From Macrostomum lignano (taxonomy: Eukaryota): 64,000 nt of DNA. Positions 9,620 to 39,204 of the stretch are shown piece after piece. A program made the translations under genes and the position numbers. Every line of letters starts with the position of its first letter. Position 1 is the first letter of the stretch. Under the pieces are notes generated by a model. It worked only from the letters and a program-made list of their open reading frames with translations, was not told where the DNA came from and made no database searches. The stretch lies in the NCBI GenBank assembly GCA_002269645.1, contig NIVC01000146.1, positions 62,001 through 126,000 of the forward strand, read 5' to 3'.

Positions 9620-10228
9620 TAGAGTGACAGGCACACAGGGTAAGGAGTGACAGACACAGGGGTAAGGAGTGACAGGCACACAGGGGTAATAGTGACAGAC
9701 ACACAGGGGTAAGGAGTGACAGGCACACAGGGGTAAGGAGTGACAGGCACACAGGGGTAAGGAGTGACAGGCACACAGGGGTAAGGAGTGACAGACACAC
9801 AGGGGTAAGGAGTGACAGGCACACAGGGGTAAGGAGTGACAGGCACACAGGGGTAATAGTGACAGACACACAGGGGTAAGAAGTGACAGGCACACAGGGG
9901 TAAGGAGTGACAGACACACATGGGTAAGGAGTGACAGACACACAAGGGTAAGGAGTGACAGACACACAAGGGTAAGGAGTGACAGACACACAAGGGTAAG
10001 GAGTGACAGGCACACAGGGGTAATAGTGACAGACACACAGGGGTAAGGAGTGACAGGCACACAGGGGTAAGGAGTGACAGACACACATGGGTAAGGAGTG
10101 ACAGACACACAAGGGTAAGGAGTGACAGACACACAAGGGTAAGGAGTGACAGACACACAAGGGTAAGGAGTGACAGACACACATGGGTAAGGAGTGACAG
10201 ACACACAAGGGTAAGGAGTGACAGACAG
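9620..10228. repeat. 24-bp minisatellite (GGGTAAGGAGTGACAGRCACACAG)n, about 25 copies, just 3' of YEATS4
   Basis: Directly visible; source of the CVCHSLPL and TPYPCVSV ORFs. Confidence 0.97.
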
Positions 10229-10267
10229 AGGCAGGTTCAAGGCGAATCCCAGGCTCAAAGTCGGCTG

Positions 10268-10775
10268 TCAGTCAGCGCCGGCAGCGGCGGAAGCGGCGCC
10301 CTCCAGCCGGGCCACCATGGCCTTGAGCCGGTCAGCCGCATCCCGCCGCTTCCGAATGACATCCTTGAGCAGGTCCAGCTCGGCCTTGAGCTCCCGCCGG
10401 CCGGAGCGGACCATTTCAAGGTCGCGCAGCTTTTTAGCCGCGTAGTCAACACCGACGGCGCTGCCCCAGTGTCGGTCGGAGCGGCAGAGGCGCGCGCAGT
10501 CAGCAGGTCGTACGTGGCCTTGGTCGGCTCGTTGAACACCAGCTCATCGTAGAGCTCCACCTGGCGTGCGGGCGGGAGGCTTTCTGTACCTGTCTGTCTG
10601 TTTGTCTCGTGTTTGTGAGTCTGTCTGTCTGTCTGTCTGTCTCAGTTTGTCTGTCTCTCTGTCTGTCTGTCTGTATTAGTGTCTGTCAGCCTGTCTGTCT
10701 GTCTGTCTGTCTTTCTTAGTATCTATCTGCCTGTCTGTCTGTCTGTCTGTATGTCTTTCTTAGTATCTATCTGCC

Positions 10776-10832
<57 letters not shown>

Positions 10833-10860
10833 ATCTGTCTGTCTGTCTGTTGTGTCAGCC

Positions 10861-10897
<37 letters not shown>

Positions 10898-11299
10898 CTC
10901 TGCCTACCAACTCACTGTCAAGGCCGTCCTCCCAGTGGTGACATCCGGATTCCGTTGATCGAACAGTTTCAACAAGTGAAACAGGGTCACCGGTTTCTCG
11001 GCTGGGTCATGCCAGACCAGCCTGATTGACAGTTCGAATTCGCCCCAGCCGGTCTCGGTGAGTTCGTAGGGCGGCTCCGTCACGGTGCGCACGGGGTTGG
11101 CGTAGCTCTCGTGCAGCTTGAATTGTACGTGTCGCACGTAGGCGGACATGCAGTCGTTCACGGCTGGCCGGATGTACACCGTCCACTCGTGCGTGTGCCC
11201 GTCTTCGTCCCGTTTCCGGCCGAGAAAACGGGCGGAATTGCCATAGACTATGGGCTTCACCACGCTGGCGTTCTTGACGCGACCTGACACGACCTCGGC
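10268..11299 (-). CDS. YEATS4: YEATS domain-containing protein 4 (GAS41/Yaf9 orthologue); exons 11299-10916 and 10560-10268; one apparent 1-nt deletion in exon 2
   Basis: [41 protein letters not shown]...[10 protein letters not shown]...[14 protein letters not shown] matches the known GAS41 YEATS domain. Phase-0 intron ACA|GTGAGT...CCAG|GTG joins to [11 protein letters not shown]. The C-terminal coiled coil [35 protein letters not shown]...AD* lies in the -1 frame, with TGA at 10270-10268. Confidence 0.95.
10585..10900. repeat. (TGTC)n microsatellite filling the YEATS4 intron
   Basis: Directly visible. Confidence 0.97.
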
Positions 11300-11439
11300 C
11301 TGCGGGTGCGCGTTGGTTGCGGGGATAAGTTTGGGAACATTTGGCTGGCTTGCGACTTATTTACAGGTGACCAAGCACCTGATAATTGCTTCTGATTGAA
11401 AGGTATTGGGTAGCCTGCGATCCACTATATCAAAGATAA

Positions 11440-11960
11440 GTAGCTAATGACCAAATGTGACCAGTAGCTTATGACCAAATTTGATTAGTAGCTTATGACC
11501 AAATGTGACCAGTAGCTTATGACCAAATTTGATTAGTAGCTTATGACCAAATCTGACCAGTAGCTAATGACCGAATTCCACCAGTAGCTAATGACCGATT
11601 TCGACCAGCAGCTAATGACCGAATGCGACCAGTAGCTAATGACAAAATTTGACCAGTAGCTAATGACCAAATTCCACCAGCAGCTAATGACCAAATTCGA
11701 CCAGTAGCTAATGACCAAGTGTTACCGGTAGCTAATGACCGATTTTGATCAGTAGCTAATGACCAAGTGTTACCGGTAGCTAATGACCGATTTTGATCAG
11801 TAGCTAATGACCAAATGTTACCAGTAGCTAATGACCAAGTGTTACCGGTAGCTAATGATCGATTTTGATCAGTAGCTAATGACCAAATTCGACTAGTAGC
11901 TAATGACCAAATTCGACTAGTAGCTAATGACCAACTAAATGAGATGAGTAGCTTATAACT
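11440..11960. repeat. 24-bp minisatellite (CCAGTAGCTAATGACCAAATTCGA-like)
   Basis: The AGTAGCTAATGACC core recurs about every 24 bp. Confidence 0.95.
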
Positions 11961-12472
11961 AAATGAGATGAAATCTATGACAGAGCTGTGTAACTAATGC
12001 TAATAGCTTCATACCGAAATCAAAGAGAAAGAACTCAAAGAGCACTTCAATCCAAAAATCAGTAAAAAGCAGGCAGTCAGCTGACTTGCTATTATATTAG
12101 CTAGGTGCAACACCAGACCTTGCAAATGCTCAAAATAGATTAACCAGCTTTAACACAGGAAGTTGAGCATCAGATTAAGAATTAATACGCGCCTAAAAAT
12201 GCTATTGAACACAAAAAAAGTTTAAGAATTTCTTGTACTCGTATAAAAAGCAGATTTTGTGAGGAGTGCGTTAATAATCGGAAAAAAATAGAAATCAGAG
12301 AAAATCGAGAGAAAAATGTTTATTATTCTACTGATAGTAACTGAAAGATTTATCATTACTTTTTGTAAAAAAAACACTTAAAAAGCTATTATAAGGCCGT
12401 CTGACTGATATTAAAAATACTACTAGGGTTGAAGACATTGCGAGCGCTCATTTAGAATACAAGTGACTGATC

Positions 12473-13418
12473 TCAAACGTCCGTGTAGTCGCGAACCCAG
12501 GCTCGCTGCCGACGGACGCTAGTCGAGGAACGCCGACAAGGACGCGGTGGCAGCGGCGGCGGCAGCTGAGCCGGCAGCGGCGGGGGCGGCGGAGGCAGCG
12601 GCATCGCCCGTCGACTGCCGACCAGGGAGGGAGTCGGGACGCCGACAAGACGCCGCAGGTCGTCCGTGAGCTGCCGAAGCTCGTCAGCCAGGACGGCCCG
12701 GCTCGGATCGGCGGCTGTCGTCGTCGACCGGCCCGGCCGGCCGGCCCGCAGCTGCGCCGCCTCCGCCTCCAAATCCGCCGCTCGCGCCGACCAGCGAAGG
12801 CAGCAGCCGCAAACGCCAGCGCCGCCGCAGGCGCTGCCGCCACAGTCGCCGCCGCCGCCTCTGCCGCAACTCGAGCCCCTCTCGGCCATCAGCGAGTGAC
12901 AACGAGGCAAGCGTCCAAGCCGATCCTCAGCTCGGCCAGCTGAGCAGCCAGGCTGTCACCGCCGTCGCCGCTAAGGCAGGAGGTGTCGCTGAATGCGCTC
13001 AGTTCGTCCTCCCCGAATTCGTCATTGAAATCGTCCGGCAGCAGGCGGTCCAGACTCTCGCCGAAGTCGCCAAGGAGGCGGTCGGAGCCGCCGCTGCCGC
13101 AGCGCAGCATGGAGCGACGCAGCAGGTGCAGCAGCTCCCGCTTCAGGCAGGCGGCGGCACGAGTCCGGCGGCGGCTTTCTTGGCTGACGCGCCCGGCCCA
13201 AAGCCGCCGCGGCTGCGCAGCTGCTGGGAATTGTCGGCCAGCCGCTGCAGCCGGTCGGAGGCGGCAGAGAAAATCTCCTGAAGCCGGTCGAGCAACAGCT
13301 CGGCTGGACCGCCAACGCCGCTGCCGCCGCCGCAGGCGCAGAGGCACCTTCGGCAGGCGAAGAGAAGGCGAAGAGAGGTCAGAGTGGCGGCCACGGCGTC
13401 CGACTGAGACTGCTGCAT
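12473..13418 (-). CDS. Hypothetical coiled-coil/Pro-rich protein ending in a class I PDZ-binding-like motif (YTDV*); split over three frames by two apparent 1-nt deletions
   Basis: Three overlapping protein-like segments in successive -1 frames: MQQSQSD...ELLLDRLQEIFSAASDRLQRL; CLKRELLHLLRRSML...LAAQLAELRIGLDAC; LADELRQLTDDLRRLVG...WVRDYTDV*. Very GC-rich. AATAAA on the minus strand at 12324-12319. Confidence 0.6.
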
Positions 13419-13466
13419 CTCCTGCCGCCGGTCAGAGGAGGCTGGTCATTCTATCTTGGCAATGAG

Positions 13467-13562: not shown

Positions 13563-13820
13563 ANNNNNNNNNNNNNNNNNNNNNNNNNNNNNNNNNNNNN
13601 NNNNNNNNNNNNNNNNNNNNNNNNNNNNNNNNNNNNNNNNNNNNNNNNNNNNNNNNNNNNNNNNNNNNNNNNNNNNNNNNNNNNNNNNNNNNNNNNNNNN
13701 NNNNNNNNNNNNNNNNNNNNNNNNNNNNNNNNNNNNNNNNNNNNNNNNNNNNNNNNNNNNNNNNNNNNNNNNNNNNNNNNNNNNNNNNNNNNNNNNNNNN
13801 NNNNNNNNNNNNNNNNNNNN
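13563..13820. other. Assembly gap (258 N)
   Basis: Run of n characters. Confidence 1.
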
Positions 13821-14329: not shown

Positions 14330-17260
14330 GCTGCAGTCGGTGCACCCAGGAGCCGTGGCGCACATTGCTGAGTGCCCTGTGGACTCCAACAAACTTCTGA
14401 TTTATGGTTTCCGCAAGGGTCTCACGGTACTGTGGGATCTGCAGAAGCGAGAGGCTCTGCGCTTCAAGCACACCGAGGACCTGTGCTCCGTGTCCTGGCA
14501 CACGAGGGTCGCATGTTCATCAGCTCGCACATCGACGGCTCCCTGGTCAAGTGGTCGCTGAAGAATCCGCAGAAGCCGGAGGTCACCTTTCCGCACGTAG
14601 GCAACTCGATGTGGGACAATCCAACTACCCTGAAACTTGACATACTGGGGGACCAAATGTTTGGTTTAGAACTTAATGCAAAATATAACGTTAAAAATAT
14701 AACGCTCAAAAAACGTCTCAACAAATTTCATCGTCAGCTAATCTCATGGAGGCAGACGGAGGCTCGCCGACTTCATTCCGACCGATTCAGCGAGTATTCT
14801 GCTCAACCGGCGTCGGGAAAACGCCGACTTGTTTCTTATTTAGCGGCGGCTCGCCCCTGGAGCTCAGCCAGCCCTGCGTGAACATCCAGCTGAATAACCA
14901 TATCGATGTACTCCAGATGGAGCACGACATTGTGGACATTGTGCCCATGTGCGACACGCCGTTCAACAATGGTGAGGGGCCGAAGCATTTGTGTTTTATA
15001 ACTCTCTGAGTACCCACTGGCAAAAGTCTGTTAGCGTGGGTCGCAAAACTGCAGTTATTTACTGTAATTTAGCCGACAATAACTAAAGCAAGGACCACTA
15101 GAAGTTACTAGTCCAGTAAGTTCAGAAGTTACAGTCTGTCTCTGTCTGTCTGTCTCTGTCTGTCTGTCTAGAAGCGACGGTAACTTCTAGTGGTCCTTGA
15201 ACTAAAAGTCTCTCAGGTAAAGCCATATTCTGTGGGTGAAGCTGTTCGCTTTGATAGTAGGACGAATAGGAATGCAATGATCAACACGTGAGGAAAGCAT
15301 AATTTTTATGGTGCGGAGTAGCTATGGCAATGGTGTTGCTATTCTCAACACCGAAGACTACATTAACAAGCTACAAAAAACATTATTTAAGACAGGAACA
15401 GATTCCAATGTCTCGGAACTCATGGACAAGGTCACCATGTCTTCATGACCAATTCCGTCAAATACGAGCTTAGCTAAGTATCTTGATTCTCTATCAAGCC
15501 TTGTATCCCTCCAATTTCACTATGAAATCCAACAGAGATTTTCTCACAGATCTCAAGACTCTTGTTCTGATATTAAGAATTCGGGCATTCAATTTGCAGC
15601 TTCGACCTCGCCTCTCTTTCTACCAACATCCCCCTCAAACTTGCCATTGACTTAACCACTGATTTAGTGCACAAACAAAAACGCCCCAATCAAGTCCTTG
15701 TCCAAGGCCTCCTTAAAAAAACTCGTAGGATTTGCGACCTCAGGCATCTTCGTGTCCGATAATAACTACTACCAGAAAATCGAAGTCTGCGCCATGGGAA
15801 GTCCGCTAGCTCTCCTACTACTTTCGCTGACGTCTGCATGTCTCATTGGGAAACTAATAATTGGAGGCCCATCGACTGCTCCCCTAAATTTTATAGACGT
15901 CATGTCGATGACACTTTCGCCATCTTGGACGGCAAAAACAAGATTGATCGTTTTGTCGAGGCTCTTAATTCCACCCAGGACAACATCAAATTCGCTATTA
16001 AGAACGCTGCTGATCAAAAACTTCCATTTATCGACCTAAAAATCGACTTAAATAATGGAACCCTTCTAGCAAAGTTTTTTTACCAATCTGATTCTCAATT
16101 TCCATGCCCTGTACTCTAGACATCGGAAATCTGACATGACCAGATGCTTGCTCCACAGGGCCTTCACCGTCTGCAACTCCTGAATCAATTTTGACCAAGA
16201 GGTCAAAGCCTTAACCAAAATATTCCAACAGAATACTTAATTACCCTCTAGCCTTTTTCCACTACAAAATTTACAAATTTATTAGTGAAAAAGTGAACCC
16301 ACAACAAACTAACAAAGCTGATCGCATGGATCTCAGTCTCAGAATGTGATCTGGAAAACTAAATTCTGAGCATCGAAGCGGTAGCAGTAAGATTCTAGCT
16401 GCAATAGGCCTAGATGCTGTACAATGGTGAAGCCGGGGAGGCTGTAGCCTTTGCAGCGCATATTTGAAACAATTATAATTTTTCGCCTTCCATTCATGCA
16501 GACATTGCCGAACCGTACGCAGTGGCTGTTCTACAGAAGAACGACTTGGCAGTTATTGACCTGACGTCCGATGGGTAAGCATGGGTGTAGCTGCCTGGGA
16601 ATACCCCCCTGCCCTGCCACCAGGGCACGTGATTAACGTCATACGTGATGCAATTCATGCTTTTGAAAGACACTTTTTCAATGCATAAGCGAGTGAAAAA
16701 TGTCCTTCAAAAGCATAAAAGATTGGCTCACAAGTATTTTTGTGCGCAGTTGATTTTAGTGGTCTCGAGTGAATTCAACCAGCCGTTAGGCACATGCAAT
16801 GCAAAATGCTAATTTCTGGCCCTGTGAAGGCTTTGACGCGTGACTGAGAAATTATGAAAACCAGAAGAGGATGTCGATATTGACTATTGCCTTAGTCTGC
16901 ACCCTGTGTGTCCCAGCTTCCTCATTCTCCCTGAATGATTGATGAGGCTTGCTCAAGGAAAGAAAAGGAGAACAGAGAATGCTTGTTGGTCGACTTTTCG
17001 ATTTTCAGAAAGCTGTTCATTTTATCCTCTTCAGTTATCAGATGGGATAAAGCAGCTCCTCCTGACTGTTCTTGCCAGATGTCTGTCTGTCTGTCTGTCT
17101 GTCTGCCTGCCTGTCTGTCTGCCTGCCTGTCTGTCTGTCTGCCTGCCTGCCTGCCTGTCTGTCTGCCTGTCTGTCTGTCTGTCTGTCTGTCTGCCTGCCT
17201 GTCTGTCTGTCTGCCTGTCTGTCTGTCTGTCTGTCTGTTCTGTCTGTCTGCCTGCCTGCC

Positions 17261-29100: not shown

Positions 29101-32100
29101 AGCTACGAGGATTCCCGTAAACATAGGGAATTCCCCGGTAACCATATGAATTCCCCAAGTAGCTCGTATCTATGAGGATTCCCCTATTTGGAAAACCCCT
29201 CGCTTGGTGCACAAGAATTCCCCAATCGCACAGCAATCAATCAACCGTCCTCCTCACCAGTGCCATCGCCTTCTACTCAAATTTGTTGCAGTCGAAGCAG
29301 ACGAAGAAGCAACGGACGCAGGCCAAATGGCACTGCATTGTCGACAAGGCAGCCCAGGTGGGCCGGCGCCTCTCACTCTCGCTCTCTCCTTTCTCTCTCT
29401 CTCTTTCCGTCTCAAATTCGCAGCTTTTCTCAAGTCTTTCCTATGATTTTCAAGATTTTTAAATTTTCTACATAAAGTCTGACGTAAACATCTCGCATAA
29501 ATGCGGGATGATATCGCATCGCGACCGAGTTTGTATCTTGAGTCTGACAGTCACCCCCCAATAGGATAACAAGCAGAGCTTTGAACACCAGCCAGAAATT
29601 TGCGTGCGTTTTCTTCCCCGTTTTGGCACCGCCATTGTCGCTCACCGCGTGACTCCCTCAGTCCTCGTAACTAATTTACTGCCTAATTAGCTAATTTCCA
29701 ACCATGCTGTATACACTCCAGATTAACATGAGTGCAGATTCGTAAGGTTGAAATTTACACAAGTTGTAGATTTACAAAGTTCTAGCTTAGGAAATAAATA
29801 GATCAACCAGGTTCTAGATAAACCAGGTTCTAGATTAACCAGGTTCTAGATCAATCAGGTTCTAGATAAACCAGGTTCTAGATTAGCCGGGTTCTAGATT
29901 AACCAGGTTCTAGATTAGCCGGGTTCTAGATTAACCAGGTTCCAGATCAACCAGGTTCTAGATTAACCAGGTTCTAGATCAAACAGGTTTTAGATTACAT
30001 AGGTTCTAGATCAACCGGGTTCTAGATTAATCTGGTTCTAGATTAACCAGGTTCTAGATCAACCAGGTTTTAGATCAACCGGGTTCTAGATCAAACAGGT
30101 TTTAGATCAACCGGGTTCTAGATTAATCTGGTTCTAGATTAACCAGGTTCTAGATCAACCAGGTTTTAGATCAACCGGGTTCTAGATTAGCCGGGTTCTA
30201 GATTAACCAGGTTCCATATCAACCAGGTTCTAGATCAACCAGGTTCTAGATTAATCAGGTTCTAGATCAAACAGGTTTTAGATCAACCGGGTTCTAGGTT
30301 AGCCAGGTTTCAAATTAACCAGGTTCTAGATCAACCTGGTTCTAGATTAACCAGGTTCTAGACTAATTAGGTTATATATTAACCAGGTTCTAGATTAACT
30401 AGATTATACTGACCAGATTATAAATTAACCAGATCCTATATTAGTAAATTCTACAAGTTATACTAGATTTACAACGACACTATAACTTTCGGTTGCACAT
30501 TGGATGCCGAATGCATCGGTAAAGTCTTATCTAGCTAAACTGTTGATATTCAACTCATGATCTCCGCTATGCGTTGTGCCAATTAAATCGCCCACTACCT
30601 TAGCCCAGGCTGCTAGGCTAATAAACTCTCTAACCCTCCGGTCAGAGCCCTGCTGTCTGACTCCCTAAGCCTCCGCAACAGTCCGCACGCTTTTTCTGCA
30701 GGGACTGTAGAGTGGCTTTTGCCATAGACAGCTGATCAGCCCCTCTATAATGACGAGCTTTTTGTGTTGTCTACTCCCTCCCCACTCAAAGCAATTGCAT
30801 TGCAATGGATCAGTCAGCATAAACACTGTGCATGACAATCTCTAGAGAATATCAAATGTTAGGGCTGCAATGTTCAAGTTGAAGAATCAGCAATGATTCA
30901 TTTTTGCTGTTCCAGTGCGTTTCACTTGATCATTAATCAGGGCTGTCAGTCGAACACAACAGTGAATTCTTAGAACTGCCGCTCTATACTTCAGTTCCCT
31001 AATCCAGCCCCATTTATCCCCTCCAGATGAACGGCATGTCAGCCGGCAGCGGCGGCGGCGGCGGCGGCGGCGGAGGCGGCCGGTTCACCCGGCGCACGGA
31101 CACCGTCAGCTCATCGTCGGCGTCTTCCTCCGCGGCGGCGGCAGCGGCGGCGGCAGCAGCGGCAGCGTCGTCCGGCCCGGCCGGCACCCGCAGCGCGGAC
31201 CTGATGCGGGCCCGCAGCCAAGGTCAGGCCGTTGGCAGGGCCGCTAGGGGGTCCTCGCAGCTGAGTCCCGGCGGCGGTGCTGGCGGCAGCTGCATCTCCA
31301 CCGCCCGTAGTTTAGAGGAGCCGCCCTCGTCGATGCAGGGCGGGCCGGCCGGCACCTCGAATTCCTTGGCCGCGCCGTCCCCCTTCGCCGGCAGGCTGAG
31401 CAGCCACGCCTCGCTAGGTTGTGAACGGACGACGGAGGCCCCGTCCCAGAATTCCTCATTTACTTCTGTGCCTCTCGTTTCCTTCAGCTTTCGCTTGTTT
31501 TCGCGCCGCGTTTGTCGTCACGTCCGGTCCGTCGGTCACCGTCCGTGTCAGCGTTCTGTCGTCACTTTTGGCGTTCCGCTCGTTTTGTCCGCCTCCGCGC
31601 ACGATCGCCTTCTGGCTCGGCCAACCCGCCCGCCGCGCCTTGTTTTTTTAGTTGGACCCCCGGGGTGGCTCCTGGGCTGTTTGCGCTTATTTTATTGCTT
31701 TCGTTTTCGTTTCTCGCTACTTATTTAGTAGACGGGCTATTTGCACTTGGGCTGAAAAATGAAATGTCTTGTGCTCAGCAGAGATAGGGTTGGGGATTAG
31801 GGGTAGGGTTGGGGATTAGGGAGCAGGTTGGGGATTAGGGGTAGGGTTGGGAATTAGGGGTAGGGTTGGGGATTAGGGATAGAGTTGGGGATTAGGGGTA
31901 GGGTTGGGAATTAGGGGTAGGGTTGGGGATTAGGGATAGAGTTGGGGATTAGGGGTAGGTTGGTGATTATGAATAGGATTGGGGTGGTTGGGGATTAGGG
32001 ATAGGATTGGGGATTAGGGATAGGGTTGGGGATTAGGAATAGGGTTGGGGATTGGGTTAGGGTTGGGGATTAGGGATATAGTTGGGGATTAGGGATAGGG

Positions 32101-35100: not shown

Positions 35101-38100
35101 TTTCCAAAATTAAAGCGCCATTTCCAAATCTAAGCGCTATTTCCAAACCTAAGCGCCATTTCCAAATCTAAGCGCTATTTTCAAAATTGAGGTGCCATTT
35201 CCAAAATCAAGGCGCTATTTCCAAACCTAAGCGCCATTTCCAAATCTAAGCGCCTTTTCCAAATCTAAGCGCCATTTTCAAAATCTAAGCGCCATTTTCG
35301 GAAATCAAGGTGCCATTTCCTAAATGGAAGCGCCATTTCAAAAACCTAAGCGCCATTTCCAAATCTAAGCGCCATTTCCAAAATCAAGGCGCCATTTTCA
35401 AAATCAACTTGCCATTTTCACAACAGAAGCGCCATTTCCAAAAGTAGAGCGCCATTTCCCAAATCTAAGCGCGATTTCCAAAATCAAGTTGCCATTTTCA
35501 AAATCAAGGCGCCATTTCTAAAATTAAAGCGCCATTTTAAAATCCAGGGGCCATTTTGAAAATCGAGGTGCCATTTTCAAAATCGAGGTGCCATTTTCAA
35601 AATCGCGGCGCCATTTTCAAATCCAAGCGCCATTTTTAAAATCAAGGCGCCATTTTCAAATCCAAGCGCCATTTTCAAAATCGAGGCGCCATTTCCAAAA
35701 TCAAGGTGTCATTTCCGAGATCAAGGTGCCATTTCAAAAATCAAGGTGTCATTTCCGAGATCAAGGTGCCATTTCCGAAATCAAGGCGCCATTTCCAAAA
35801 TCAAAGTGCCATTTTCAAAATGAAGACGCTCTCTTTTTCTTAAATTGATGTGTAATCTAGTTGACGGTATTTCTAATTGTTTTCAATAACTATTTTTATG
35901 CGATTATAAAATTAAGGGTGAGCCTTACTCGCATACTCCTATAATTTTAAACTTACGTTTGCATCCTTAGCCCAGCCATCTCACTGTCCCTCACTTTTAG
36001 CTCTTTCCTGGAAAGGGACTCCTACATGTGCAGGTAGCTGCTGGGTCGATATAACTAATATAGAAAGTTATCAGAATCGATTAAGCATGTATCATTGTGA
36101 ATATCATTTTTAGCAGTCAGTTTGCATGAGAACAAAGAGTTAATTATTGTTTCTTTGAATATTTGCTGAATGGCCAATTTTAAAGTTGAAAGTTTTTTGT
36201 TAATATTAGAAAATCCCATTTCTTAGAAAACGTGCTAGATTTTAAAAAATATTGTCGTATTTTCTTTGCTTGTTTTGTTACTTTTTTTTGCAAACCACTT
36301 GCCACTATATCTCAACATTATTTAGCCAATCAAAATTGCTTCTTCAGACAGATTCGAACCTTCCAGTGCAGCAATCACGGGCAAGCCGTGTACTTTTGCT
36401 CTCCGAGTGAACTGCAGAAAATCACTCTGTCCAGTGAGATGAGGTGAGGCACTGATTAAATGAATGTAATCATAGCATGTTATATTTATGCTATTTTTAC
36501 ATATATTACATTTATTAATAAATGAACTTATTTGGCAAGATACCAGTACATGTATTAAACAGCTAATCCACCCAACACGAAAAAAGGAATAGAATGGATT
36601 GCTGATCTAGCCAACACAGATGAAGGAATAGAATGGATTGCTAATCTAGCCAACACAGATGAAGGAATAGAATGGATTGCTAATCTATCCAACACAGATG
36701 AAGGAATAGAATGGATTGCTAATCTATCCAACACAGATGAAGGAATAGAATGGATTGCTAATCTATCCAACACAGATGAAGGAATAGAATGGATTGCTAA
36801 TGTAGCCAACACAGATGAAGGAATAGAATGGATTGCTAATCTATCCAACACAGATGAAGGAATAGAATGGATTGCTAATCTAGCCAAAAAGAATGAAGGA
36901 ATAACATGAATTGCTAATACATTTAACCCGCAGCAACGACCTGAACGACATGCTGGCGGATCTGTACATTCCCTGCGACTTGCCCGAGCCGCCAAAGAAG
37001 AACTTTCTAGAAAAATTCGGTCAGAATCTTTTCGGAAGCGGCGCGTCTTCAATCGACCGGGAGCAGCTCTGTGAGTTGCTTTGCATTACCTGCCGACTCT
37101 GCTTGTTAGTAGTATCAAGCGGATTTTCAGTGCTATTTCTACGATAAAAACTCGATTATGTTTTTATTATTTCAGTTGGCGAGGCCGCCGCGGGCAAGGC
37201 GTCCGCCGGCATCTGCAAGCTGACGCGCGGCCCCAACATGGAGGGCGTTCAGGCCAGGGCCGCCGGCGCCTCCTCCGAGATCGGGCTGGCCATGCAGGTG
37301 AGCCCTACACCTACCCTTCATCTCACCCTGGCTTCTGTCTCCTGAAATCTCTTGTTTTATTTAGTCTCCCTTCATCTCACCCTTCATTCAATCTCTTTTA
37401 ATCTCACCACTCTTCTCATCCTTCGTTTCACCCTACATTAAGTCTCTCTTCCTCTCACCCTTAATCTCACCCCTTATTTCCCATTCATCTCACTCTTCAT
37501 CTCATCCTTCGTCTCACCCTTAATCTCATCCTTCGTCTCACCCTTAATCTCATCCTTCGTCTCACCCTTAATCTAATCCTTCGTCTCACTCTTCATCTCA
37601 TCCTTCGTCTCACCCTTAATCTCATCCTTCGTCTCACCCTTAATCTCATCCTTCGTCTCACCCTTAATCTCATCCTTCGTCTCACTCTTCATCTCATCCT
37701 TCGTCTCACTCTTCATTTTGTCTACCGTATCCCACCCTTTTCAATCTCCATTCAATTCTCATTCTTTATAAGCTTCTTTTCTTCCTTTAATCTCATTTTT
37801 CATCATTAGTCTCCAGTCTCCCCGATTGAAGCCTGACTATCTGGTTTAGCTCACTAAATATTACACCCTCTACTGGTTGATCTTAAACAAAAAGCAACAA
37901 AATTACTTGCTAAGCATCAGACAGGGAGCCGTGCAGATGCAGTCAACTGATTCGTCTGCAAAGATAGATAAGTGCTACTTCATACCATAACATTTCGGCA
38001 ATAATCTCCTTTGGGACTCGACTAAGCTTTTCAATGATACAGTTTCACTAAGGATTTCTGTTTGATATTCAGCCGGCTCCATCATTAATTTATGCTGCTA

Positions 38101-39204
38101 TCCCTTGAATTTCGCTTTCAAAGCAGTTCTTGTTTGTTTGAGCTCTTATACTGCCATTCATTGAATTTCTGGCATCGCCTTCTCCCCTCCGCCTTCTCCC
38201 CTTCGCCTTCTCCCCTTCGCCTTCCCCCCTCCGCCTTCCTCCCTCCGACTTCTCCCCTCCGCCTTCCCCCCTCCGCCTTCCCCCCTCCGCCTTCCTCCCT
38301 CCGTCTTCCCCCCTCCGCCTTCCTCCCTCCGTCTTCTCCCCTTCGCCTTCCCCCCTCCGCCTTCCCCCCTTCGCCTTCTCCCCTCCGCCTTCTCCCCTTC
38401 GCCTTCCCCCCTCCGCCTCCCCCCCTCCGCCTTCCCCCCTCTGTCTTCTCCCCTTCGCCTTCTCCCCTCCGCCTTCTCCCCTCCGCCTTCTCCCCTTCGC
38501 CATCTCCCCTCCACCTTCTCCCCTCCGACTTCTCCCCTCCGCCTTCTCCCCTCCGACTTCTCCCCTCCGACTTCTCCCCTCCGACTTCTCTCCTCCGCCT
38601 TCTCCCCTTCGCCTTCTCCCCTCCGACTTCTCCCCCCTCCGACTTCTCCCCTCCGACTTCTCCCCTCCGACTTCTCACTCCGACTTCTCCCCTCCGCCTT
38701 CTCCCCTCCGACTTCTCCCCTCCGACTTCTCACTCCGACTTCTCCCCTCCGCCTTCTCCCCTCCGTCTTCCCCCTCCGCCTTCTCCACTCCTACTTCTCC
38801 ACCCTCCGACTTCTTACCTCCGACTTCTCCCCTCCGACTTCTCCCCTCCGACTTCTCCCCTCCTACTTCTTGCCTTCTTACAAGCCCTTTGAGTACAGAA
38901 GCTCCAAGCTTTTATTATACTAGAATACCCGATGAATATAAATTTCATTCCGATATTTTGCTGCACATTATATACCTTTAGCCTGTTTTCCCTTGCACAA
39001 ATTAATCATTTCGGCAGCCGTCTGAATCCCCTCCCTTATTTTCGCCCCGACAACCCGCAGAAAGCGATGGAGCGCGGCGAGAAGCTGAGCGAAGTGGACG
39101 AGCAGACCGAACGGATGAAGAACTCTGCCGAGCAGCACAGGAATGTTGCCGGCCAGCTGGCGCAAAAGTACAAAGATAAGGACAAGAAATGGTGGCCGTT
39201 TTGA
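14330..39204 (+). CDS. STXBP5: Tomosyn / syntaxin-binding protein 5 (Lgl-family WD40 protein with C-terminal R-SNARE); 5' exons absent
   Basis: GT-AG exons: 14330-14596, 14738-14971, 16502-16574, 19391-19940, 20049-20186, 24360-24508, 24819-24907, 25145-25221, 31027-31417 (or -31222), 32877-32987, 33621-34099, 34776-34981, 36348-36443, 36934-37070, 37176-37297, 39061-39204. Phases are compatible from 14738 onward; the first exon needs two 1-nt corrections. Recognised motifs: YPNFENPYPMDLHESPVT, ILVTGHADGSLKFWDAS, SPGYQPELV, PCLWVGT, QPVIVSPSG, LPSLRPLMDV, IDREQLFGE, and the terminal R-SNARE AMERGEKLSEVDEQTERMKNSAEQH...KYKDKDKKWWPF*. Confidence 0.95.
15089..15199. mobile_element. 111-bp MITE (hAT-like) with perfect 20-bp TIRs and an internal (GTCT)n
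   Basis: CAAGGACCACTAGAAGTTAC at 15089-15108 and its exact reverse complement at 15180-15199. Flanks AACTAAAG / AACTAAAA are an 8-bp TSD with one mismatch. Confidence 0.8.
15320..16240 (+). pseudogene. Degenerate reverse transcriptase of a Penelope-like element (PLE) in a tomosyn intron
   Basis: Broken frames carry GNGVAILNTEDYINKL, AMGSPLA, KFYRRHVDDTFAI (YVDD-type catalytic motif), NSTQDNIKF, LPFIDL and LLHRAFTVCN, in the order typical of PLE RTs. Several stops and frameshifts. Confidence 0.75.
17070..17482. repeat. (TGTC/TGCC)n microsatellite
   Basis: Directly visible. Confidence 0.97.
21318..21655. repeat. 26-bp minisatellite (ACTGATGATGTAAACTGATAATGTTT)n, about 13 copies
   Basis: Directly visible. 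Confidence 0.96.
24575..24765. repeat. ~32-bp minisatellite (ACTAACGTTAGTTAACACACTGAAGTGTCAGC), about 6 copies
   Basis: Directly visible. Confidence 0.9.
25668..26060. repeat. ~38-bp C-rich minisatellite (CCCCTACAACCCCACCCCAGTCCAACCGCCCGCACAA)
   Basis: Directly visible. Confidence 0.93.
27050..27440. repeat. 18-bp minisatellite (TTCCAAGGGAAATCCCAT)n
   Basis: Directly visible; source of the FPREIP ORFs. Confidence 0.97.
28660..29170. repeat. ~110-bp tandem repeat rich in GGGATTCCC/CCATGG palindromes, about 4 copies
   Basis: CTCATTCTTGTAACCATGGAGCTATCGGAATTCCC recurs at about 110-bp spacing. Confidence 0.88.
29805..30430. repeat. 16-bp minisatellite (AACCAGGTTCTAGATT)n
   Basis: Directly visible. 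Confidence 0.96.
31786..32510. repeat. 19-bp G-rich telomere-like minisatellite (GGGATAGGGTTGGGGATTA)n
   Basis: Directly visible; one TTAGGG and three G-runs per unit. Confidence 0.96.
32992..33587. repeat. 23-bp minisatellite (GGACTGGAGGGAGCGGCAGTTCA)n filling nearly a whole tomosyn intron
   Basis: Begins a few nt after the donor at 32988 and ends about 30 nt before the acceptor at 33620. Confidence 0.97.
34178..34742. repeat. 9-bp minisatellite (ACCTCCGAC)n in a tomosyn intron
   Basis: Directly visible. Confidence 0.96.
35030..35830. repeat. Degenerate ~20-bp minisatellite (GCGCCATTTCCAAAATCAAG-like)
   Basis: Directly visible. Confidence 0.93.
36570..36920. repeat. 39-bp minisatellite (GATGAAGGAATAGAATGGATTGCTAATCTATCCAACACA), about 9 copies
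   Basis: Directly visible. Confidence 0.96.
37305..37800. repeat. CT-rich 24-bp minisatellite (TCTCACCCTTAATCTCATCCTTCG) with degenerate flanks
   Basis: Directly visible. Confidence 0.9.
38172..38880. repeat. ~14-bp pyrimidine-rich minisatellite (CTCCGCCTTCTCCC / CTCCGACTTCTCCC)n
   Basis: Directly visible. Confidence 0.95.

What the first reader, a model, noticed from the sequence alone, without database searches (positions are those of the whole stretch)
11290..11345. YEATS4 has a splice acceptor where its start codon should be: candidate spliced-leader AUG initiation
Seen: the minus strand reads CCCGCAG|GCC GAG GTC GTG TCA GGT CGC GTC AAG (AEVVSGRVK), aligning with human ...M-A-E...SGGRVK. 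There is no in-frame ATG back to an in-frame TAA, and I found no ATG|GT micro-exon between here and the upstream gene. Established: flatworm spliced leaders end in AUG, and that AUG can serve as the initiator Met. Inference: trans-splicing at 11299 would create ATG-GCC-GAG in frame. Caveat: an ATG at 11340 is 41 nt upstream and would be in frame if one more base were missing here.
Basis: partly seen in the sequence, partly recalled or inferred. Interest (0 to 1): 0.7.

Follow-up and report, generated by a model that had tools for sequence, protein, structure and literature searches.

The report
Flatworm YEATS4 start codon from spliced leader
In the flatworm Macrostomum lignano the YEATS4 gene has no start codon of its own and most likely takes it from the AUG that ends the trans-spliced leader, a mechanism already known in flatworms, so this is a clean new example and not a new kind of thing.

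Summary
On the minus strand the YEATS4 reading frame opens directly after an acceptor, CCCGCAG|GCC at 11300/11299. An in-frame TAA lies at 11359-11357 with no in-frame ATG after it. The ATG at 11340 is out of frame.

The window is Macrostomum lignano assembly Mlig_3_7. GenBank annotates this gene and two paralogous copies as 5'-partial CDSs that begin at exactly this base. That annotation came from a pipeline that cuts transcripts at peaks of reads containing the spliced leader (SL).

The published 35-nt SL ends in ATG. Joining it at 11299 makes that ATG the first AUG and gives [10 protein letters not shown], which matches the MAE/MAD N-termini of orthologues.

The two paralogues match the window between ATG 11340 and the acceptor except for a 3-nt TGT indel, which preserves the frame. 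The 1.17-kb intergenic region holds six ATGs, none followed by GT, and no consensus donor. The next in-frame Met, residue 51, lies inside the YEATS domain.

I saw no SL-containing reads, and translation from the SL AUG is inferred. SL-AUG initiation has been established in flatworms since 2006, so this is a new member of a known kind and of low interest. The window copy also carries single-base deletions that break exon 2.

The parts
11300..11306 (-). Trans-splice acceptor CCCGCAG, with AG at 11301-11300. The two paralogous copies read CCCTGTGCAG here.
   Evidence: It matches 5 of 6 positions of the published trans-splice acceptor motif [T/C]TNCAG (PMC8629364).
10916..11299 (-). YEATS4 coding exon 1, 384 nt and 128 codons, starting AEVVSGRVK with no ATG. 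It is followed by the donor GTGAG at 10915.
   Evidence: The annotated CDS start is L003:10001, which equals window 11299.
10561..10915 (-). Cis intron 1 (GTGAGT...GCCAG), mostly a CTGT/GACA microsatellite.
10255..10560 (-). YEATS4 exon 2. The window copy lacks one C at about 10494/10495, which shifts the frame and loses the C-terminal coiled coil. The stop in the intact frame would be at 10270-10268; the annotated shifted stop is at 10257-10255.
11357..11359 (-). In-frame TAA that closes the frame upstream of the acceptor.
11257..11340 (-). Out-of-frame ATG (11340) with a 27-codon ORF. It lies in the outron and would be removed by trans-splicing.
   Evidence: It is out of frame in all three copies.
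11439..11934 (.). 24-bp satellite (20.7 copies) that fills about 40% of the intergenic/outron region.
12473..13421 (-). Upstream gene on the same strand (316 aa in the paralogues, no Pfam match). Its exon starts right after an acceptor, ggcggcag|GAG ATG. In the window copy it is broken by two 1-nt deletions.

Best explanation
YEATS4 of Macrostomum lignano is an SL trans-spliced gene, probably the downstream member of an operon-like transcription unit. The 35-nt spliced leader (...TTGCATG) is joined to the acceptor at 11300|11299. The leader's terminal AUG then becomes the first AUG of the mRNA, 32 nt from the cap and in frame with GCC GAG. The protein therefore starts [10 protein letters not shown]. 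The genomic gene has no start codon of its own, so making the full protein depends on trans-splicing. Shown here: the acceptor, the closed frame upstream, the lack of any alternative start, the identity of the organism, and the annotated transcript/CDS boundary in three copies. Taken from the literature: the SL sequence, the use of SL reads to set annotation boundaries, and the ability of a flatworm SL AUG to initiate translation. Inferred: that SL reads exist at this particular site, and that ribosomes start at the SL AUG in this species.
For: (1) The organism is M. lignano. The query is 100% identical to GenBank proteins BOX15_Mlig022474g1 and BOX15_Mlig025434g3, both labelled 'partial', and the window lies in NIVC01000146.1.
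(2) All three genomic copies have the CDS starting at the first base after CAG. An older, independent model, UniProt A0A1I8GM24, starts QAEVV and also has no Met.
(3) The GenBank annotation derives from TBONE, which cuts transcripts at peaks of SL-containing reads, followed by TransDecoder (PMC5730564). If the transcript ran further upstream, the 5'-partial ORF would extend to the TAA at 11359. It does not.
(4) The SL is CGGTCTCTTACTGCGAAGACTCAATTTATTGCATG (PMC8629364). SL plus exon gives a single ATG, which is the first in the mRNA, and the product [11 protein letters not shown].
(5) Orthologues begin MAEF, MADF, MAEY or MSEF a few residues before GGRVKG. The human structured domain starts at the residue that aligns with query residue 5.
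(6) The next in-frame Met is residue 51, inside the Pfam YEATS domain (residues 34-113) and downstream of about 20 invariant residues.
(7) The upstream same-strand gene also starts at an acceptor, cag|GAG ATG. The locus tag suffix g3 matches the position of YEATS4 as the third of three same-strand genes in the paralogue loci. The intergenic distance is 1173 nt, or about 677 nt without the satellite, which is under the 1-kb repeat-adjusted operon criterion of PMC8629364.
(8) The mechanism is established in other flatworms: Cheng et al. 2006 as cited in PMC9851317, PMC12582326 and PMC3510090.
Against: I did not see any SL-containing read or cDNA across the junction. The protein collection holds no transcript-derived M. 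lignano YEATS4, and a metagenome scan found nothing. Not every 5'-partial CDS in this annotation starts at an acceptor: the plus-strand gene that starts at window 14833 does not, and the window copy of the upstream gene starts 5 nt after its acceptor. So a boundary at AG is strong evidence but not proof. The acceptor is mediocre, with 55% pyrimidines in the 20 nt before the AG and 5 of 6 motif positions matched. Initiation at an SL AUG has not been demonstrated in Macrostomum. The window copy itself carries a frameshift in exon 2, so this copy may be mis-assembled or non-functional.
Confidence: 0.8

Rival explanations
1. Assembly error. A base is missing between 11340 and 11299, so the genomic ATG at 11340 is really in frame and gives a conventional start with an N-terminal extension of about 14 residues.
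For: The window copy does contain single-base deletions relative to its paralogues: four in about 3 kb, with no substitutions at all, at about 13431, 13150, 12896 and 10495. An indel error is therefore plausible in principle.
Against: The two other assembled copies (L001, L002) have intact reading frames for both genes. They match the window across this stretch except for a 3-nt TGT indel, which leaves the ATG out of frame at 44 nt instead of 41 nt. The independent older model also has no Met. The extension would resemble no orthologue N-terminus. The annotated transcript starts downstream of this ATG.
Confidence: 0.03
2. A cis-spliced upstream exon that was not annotated supplies the ATG, and the acceptor at 11300 is an ordinary intron acceptor.
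For: Flatworm acceptors are often shared between cis- and trans-splicing (PMC12582326). The satellite-rich intergenic region could have hampered transcript assembly. There are a few phase-0 GT sites after ATGs at 12451, 12438, 12356 and 12012.
Against: None of the six ATGs is followed by GT. The 1173-nt region has no GT[AG]AG consensus donor on this strand. Three copies and two independent annotations all lack such an exon. Orthologues start MAE/MAD, so no extra exon is needed.
Confidence: 0.07
3. The mRNA is trans-spliced at 11299 but the SL AUG is not the start that is used. Translation would begin at a near-cognate codon or at Met51. Alternatively, the window copy is a non-functional duplicate.
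For: SL-AUG initiation has not been shown in Macrostomum. The -3 position of the SL AUG is a U. The window copy has a frameshift in exon 2 that removes the coiled coil.
Against: The SL AUG is the first AUG, has a 32-nt leader and G at +4, and is in frame. Starting at Met51 would delete the first strands of the YEATS fold and about 20 invariant residues. Two paralogues with the same 5' architecture have intact ORFs. The frameshifts in the window copy look like consensus deletion errors, because they are indels only, with no substitutions.
Confidence: 0.07

Closest known systems
[quoted passage not shown]
   Same: The SL ends in AUG. The acceptor sits directly before the first sense codon. The SL AUG is in frame. 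The N-terminus matches conserved orthologues only if the SL AUG is used. This is the same argument made for more than 40 Schistosoma cDNAs and for Echinococcus.
   Different: The species is a free-living, early-branching rhabditophoran (Macrostomorpha), where I found no systematic study of SL-AUG use. I found only a figure-legend remark that the ATG is a start codon (PMC10468722). Translation was not tested here.
SL trans-splicing that resolves operon-like transcription units in M. lignano (Wudarski et al. 2017, PMC5730564; Ustyantsev & Berezikov 2021, PMC8629364)
   Same: There is a same-strand upstream gene. The repeat-adjusted spacing is under 1 kb. The gene is conserved with human, and such genes are enriched among trans-spliced genes. 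The locus tag suffix is g3, and the gene is the third of three same-strand genes in the paralogue loci.
   Different: I did not see a polycistronic precursor. In the window copy a 257-nt scaffold gap (13564-13820) interrupts the unit, and the gene is tagged g1.
YEATS4/GAS41 (the acyl-lysine reader subunit of human TIP60/SRCAP complexes, from my own knowledge)
   Same: It has a YEATS domain (PF03366, 102 bits), matches human YEATS4 structures at E=6e-62, and the paralogue copies have a C-terminal coiled coil.
   Different: The N-terminus is 8 residues shorter than in human. The genomic copy has no start codon. The window copy has a frameshifted C-terminus.

Membership tests
SL-AUG-initiated trans-spliced flatworm mRNA | The organism has an SL RNA whose leader ends in AUG. 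| tested here: met
   The organism was identified as M. lignano by 100% matches to GenBank proteins and contig NIVC01000146.1. The SL sequence ending in ATG comes from PMC8629364. The window itself holds no SL RNA gene.
SL-AUG-initiated trans-spliced flatworm mRNA | A 3' splice acceptor lies immediately before the first sense codon, and the mature 5' end maps there. | tested here: met
   CAG|GCC at 11300/11299. The annotated CDS starts at exactly that base in three copies, and the annotation pipeline sets 5' ends from SL-read peaks.
SL-AUG-initiated trans-spliced flatworm mRNA | Reads or cDNAs carry the SL joined at this site. | not testable with these tools
   No M. lignano transcript data could be reached. 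The cluster look-up holds only genome-derived models, the metagenome scan was empty, and supplement searches were empty.
SL-AUG-initiated trans-spliced flatworm mRNA | The SL AUG is in frame with the conserved ORF and is the first AUG. | tested here: met
   SL plus exon gives [11 protein letters not shown], and the SL has only one ATG.
SL-AUG-initiated trans-spliced flatworm mRNA | No genomic alternative start exists that preserves the conserved N-terminus. | tested here: met
   In-frame TAA at 11359 with no ATG after it. The first in-frame Met is residue 51, inside the YEATS domain. There is no ATG|GT and no consensus donor upstream. The indel alternative is excluded by the paralogues.
SL-AUG-initiated trans-spliced flatworm mRNA | Translation actually initiates at the SL AUG. 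| not testable with these tools
   This needs Ribo-seq, N-terminal proteomics or a reporter.
YEATS4/GAS41 | YEATS domain above the Pfam threshold and best similarity to YEATS4. | tested here: met
   PF03366 at 102 bits against a cut-off of 22. Human YEATS4 chains are the best PDB hits at E=6e-62.
YEATS4/GAS41 | C-terminal coiled coil. | tested here: inconclusive
   It is present in the paralogue product P0002 and aligns with orthologues. The window copy loses it through a 1-nt deletion at about 10494/10495, which is probably an assembly error.
Downstream gene of an M. lignano operon | A same-strand upstream gene lies within 1 kb, repeat-adjusted, and the downstream gene is trans-spliced. | tested here: inconclusive
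   The spacing is 1173 nt minus the 496-nt satellite, about 677 nt, which meets the criterion from PMC8629364. I did not see a polycistronic precursor or SL reads.

The most novel reading that the evidence does not exclude
YEATS4, a conserved chromatin reader, depends strictly on the spliced-leader AUG in Macrostomum, an early-branching free-living flatworm. The acceptor AG sits exactly where orthologues have their start codon (ATG|GCx has become CAG|GCC). That would mean obligate SL-AUG initiation predates the parasitic Neodermata, where it was described, and that production of this protein requires trans-splicing.
Probability: 0.7. Interest if true: 0.3.

Novelty: new member of a known kind. 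Interest (0 to 1): 0.25.

Why it matters
The main value is practical. The GenBank and UniProt models of this gene are labelled partial or start with a spurious Q. The complete protein is obtained simply by adding the Met encoded by the SL. The same is likely true of many 5'-partial M. lignano models that begin at an acceptor, and the gene next door is a second case where the SL AUG is in frame. Biologically, this is one clear example that SL-AUG initiation also operates in Macrostomorpha, outside the parasitic flatworms where it was documented. It does not change what is known about the mechanism.

Tried and rejected
- An Rfam scan of the whole window at gathering thresholds gave no hits, so there is no SL RNA gene or other known RNA here.
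- A search for the 3' half of the SL in the window, allowing up to 3 mismatches, found none.
- A metagenome scan for the first 27 nt of the exon, meant to catch any cDNA-like contig, gave 0 hits.
- The protein cluster look-up held only genome-derived models and no transcript-derived MAEVV... sequence.
- Supplement and full-text searches for the locus tags found nothing.
- The Wasik et al. 2015 PNAS paper is not held in the library.
- I tried to get gene calls for the rest of the window from two ATG-started ORFs, 38092-38892 and 31027-31728. Neither is on record, so I could not survey how many other genes in the window start at acceptors.
- I rejected initiation at Met51 because it truncates the domain, and the ATG at 11340 because it is out of frame in all three copies.
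- An in-frame alternative acceptor, CAG|CCA at 11345/11344, exists. No annotation supports it.

Full report
**Observation**

Reading the minus strand confirms the sequence ...cgcgcacccgcag|GCC GAG GTC GTG TCA GGT CGC GTC AAG. The AG is at 11301-11300 and the first exon base is at 11299. Translating upstream in the same frame gives 19 sense codons and then TAA at 11359-11357, and none of those codons is ATG. The ATG at 11340 is 41 nt upstream, which is frame +2. It opens a 27-codon ORF that runs out of frame into the exon.

The gene model is exon 1 (11299..10916), a GTGAG...CAG intron filled with a CTGT microsatellite, and exon 2 (10560..10255). It translates exactly to a GenBank protein. That protein carries a YEATS domain (PF03366, 102 bits). 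Its best solved-structure relatives are human YEATS4 chains (E=6e-62).

**What and where**

The protein search returned two 100%-identical Macrostomum lignano entries, BOX15_Mlig022474g1 and BOX15_Mlig025434g3. Both are labelled 'partial' and both start AEVVSGRVK. The window lies in NIVC01000146.1 of assembly GCA_002269645.1 (Mlig_3_7). Two further genomic copies exist, L001 and L002.

In all three copies the annotated CDS begins at the first base after CAG. A separate UniProt model, A0A1I8GM24, begins QAEVV. The extra Q is the CAG of the acceptor read as a codon, and this model also has no Met.

**Why the annotated boundary matters**

According to Wudarski et al. 2017 (PMC5730564), the GenBank annotation was produced in three steps. 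Transcriptional units were assembled, they were cut by the TBONE pipeline at peaks of trimmed SL-containing reads, and ORFs were then called with TransDecoder.

A 5'-partial ORF is extended to the 5' end of its transcript. If the transcript ran upstream of 11299, the ORF would have continued to the TAA at 11359, adding [19 protein letters not shown]. It does not, so the mature 5' end is at the acceptor.

The upstream same-strand gene in the paralogue loci behaves the same way. Its CDS starts at ggcggcag|GAG ATG CAG. This is indirect evidence. I did not see reads, and not all 5'-partial CDSs in this annotation begin at an acceptor. The plus-strand gene that starts at 14833 does not.

**Mechanism**

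The M. lignano SL is CGGTCTCTTACTGCGAAGACTCAATTTATTGCATG (PMC8629364). Joined to 11299, its only ATG is the first AUG of the mRNA, 32 nt from the 5' end. It is followed by G at +4 and is in frame, giving [11 protein letters not shown].

Orthologues commonly begin MAEF, MADF, MAEY or MSEF a few residues before the conserved GGRVKG. The structured part of human YEATS4 starts at the residue aligned with residue 5 of the flatworm exon. The SL Met therefore recreates the usual N-terminus of the family.

The next in-frame Met is residue 51. It lies inside the Pfam domain (residues 34-113) and follows about 20 invariant residues. A downstream start would therefore destroy the fold.

**Rivals**

*Missing base.* This was a fair worry. 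Compared with copy L001, the window copy shows no substitutions in the roughly 2.1 kb compared base by base. It differs by four 1-nt deletions, at about 13431, 13150, 12896 and 10495, plus a few longer indels. That pattern is typical of long-read consensus errors. Two of the deletions break the upstream gene (175 aa against 316 aa) and one breaks the YEATS4 C-terminal coiled coil.

Between 11340 and 11299, however, the two other copies match the window except for a 3-nt TGT indel right at the acceptor (CACCCTGTGCAG against CACCCGCAG). Both of those copies have intact ORFs. The ATG is out of frame in all three copies.

*Upstream cis exon.* The 1173-nt intergenic region has six ATGs on this strand. 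None is followed by GT, and only weak non-consensus GT sites lie in phase 0 after four of them. There is no GT[AG]AG, the species' donor consensus, anywhere in the region. About 40% of the region is a 24-bp satellite.

*No SL-AUG usage.* This cannot be excluded without translation data. The SL AUG is nevertheless the first AUG, and the only one that gives a complete domain.

**Context**

YEATS4 is the third of three same-strand genes in the paralogue loci: a zinc-finger gene, then a 316-aa gene with no Pfam match, then YEATS4. This fits the g3 suffix of its locus tag. The spacing to the upstream gene is about 677 nt once the satellite is removed. That is within the repeat-adjusted 1-kb operon criterion of Ustyantsev and Berezikov. 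In the window copy, a 257-nt run of N (13564-13820) interrupts the unit 140 nt upstream of the neighbour's acceptor, and similarity to the paralogue loci ends there.

**Comparison with what is known**

All reported flatworm SLs end in AUG (PMC12582326). This AUG has been shown to act as an initiator Met: Cheng et al. 2006 is cited in PMC9851317 for 28% of trans-spliced Schistosoma transcripts being in frame and for more than 40 cDNAs that require it. The usage is conserved among Neodermata (PMC3510090).

For Macrostomum, I found only a figure-legend note that the terminal ATG is a translation start codon (PMC10468722), and no gene-level analysis. The present case is therefore a new, well-supported member of a known kind in a less-studied lineage.

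**Verdict**

Novelty is low. The remaining gap is direct RNA and translation evidence, which a simple search of public reads would largely close.

Noticed in passing
window 13421 (minus strand); L001:7864, L002:8176: The upstream same-strand gene (316 aa, no Pfam match) also has its annotated 5'-partial CDS starting right after an acceptor, ggcggcag|GAG ATG CAG. The SL AUG would be in frame there too (M-E-M-Q-Q), one codon ahead of a genomic ATG. In the window copy the annotated CDS instead starts 5 nt after the acceptor, in another frame.
   Followed up: partly
window ~13431, ~13150, ~12896, ~10494/10495: Compared with paralogue L001, the window copy shows four single-base deletions and no substitutions over the roughly 2.1 kb compared base by base. 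They truncate the upstream gene (175 aa against 316 aa) and frameshift YEATS4 exon 2, losing the coiled coil. This looks like long-read consensus error and not divergence.
   Followed up: partly
window 11303 (between CACCC and GCAG): There is a 3-nt TGT indel exactly at the polypyrimidine/acceptor region. The window reads CACCCGCAG and both paralogues read CACCCTGTGCAG. It preserves the frame. Its effect on acceptor strength is unknown.
   Followed up: no
window 13564-13820: A 257-nt run of N (a scaffold gap) lies 140 nt upstream of the neighbour gene's acceptor. Similarity to the paralogue loci stops here. The zinc-finger gene that heads the unit in L001 and L002 is absent from the window copy. 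A plus-strand gene with a 5'-partial CDS that is not at an acceptor starts at 14833.
   Followed up: partly
window 11439-11934; 10590-10902; 9622-10227: Three tandem arrays surround the gene. One is a 24-bp satellite (20.7 copies) in the outron/intergenic region. One is a CTGT microsatellite (78 copies) that fills the intron. One is a 24-bp array (25.5 copies, with a 167-bp higher-order period) starting about 30 nt after the annotated stop.
   Followed up: no
window 11345/11344 (minus strand): A second in-frame acceptor-like site, AGCCAG|CCA, lies 45 nt upstream of the annotated one. SL joining there would give [20 protein letters not shown]. No annotation supports it.
   Followed up: no
UniProt A0A1I8GM24 (P0121): The older M. 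lignano model of this gene starts with Q, which is the CAG of the acceptor translated as a codon. The model boundary ran 3 nt into the acceptor.
   Followed up: yes
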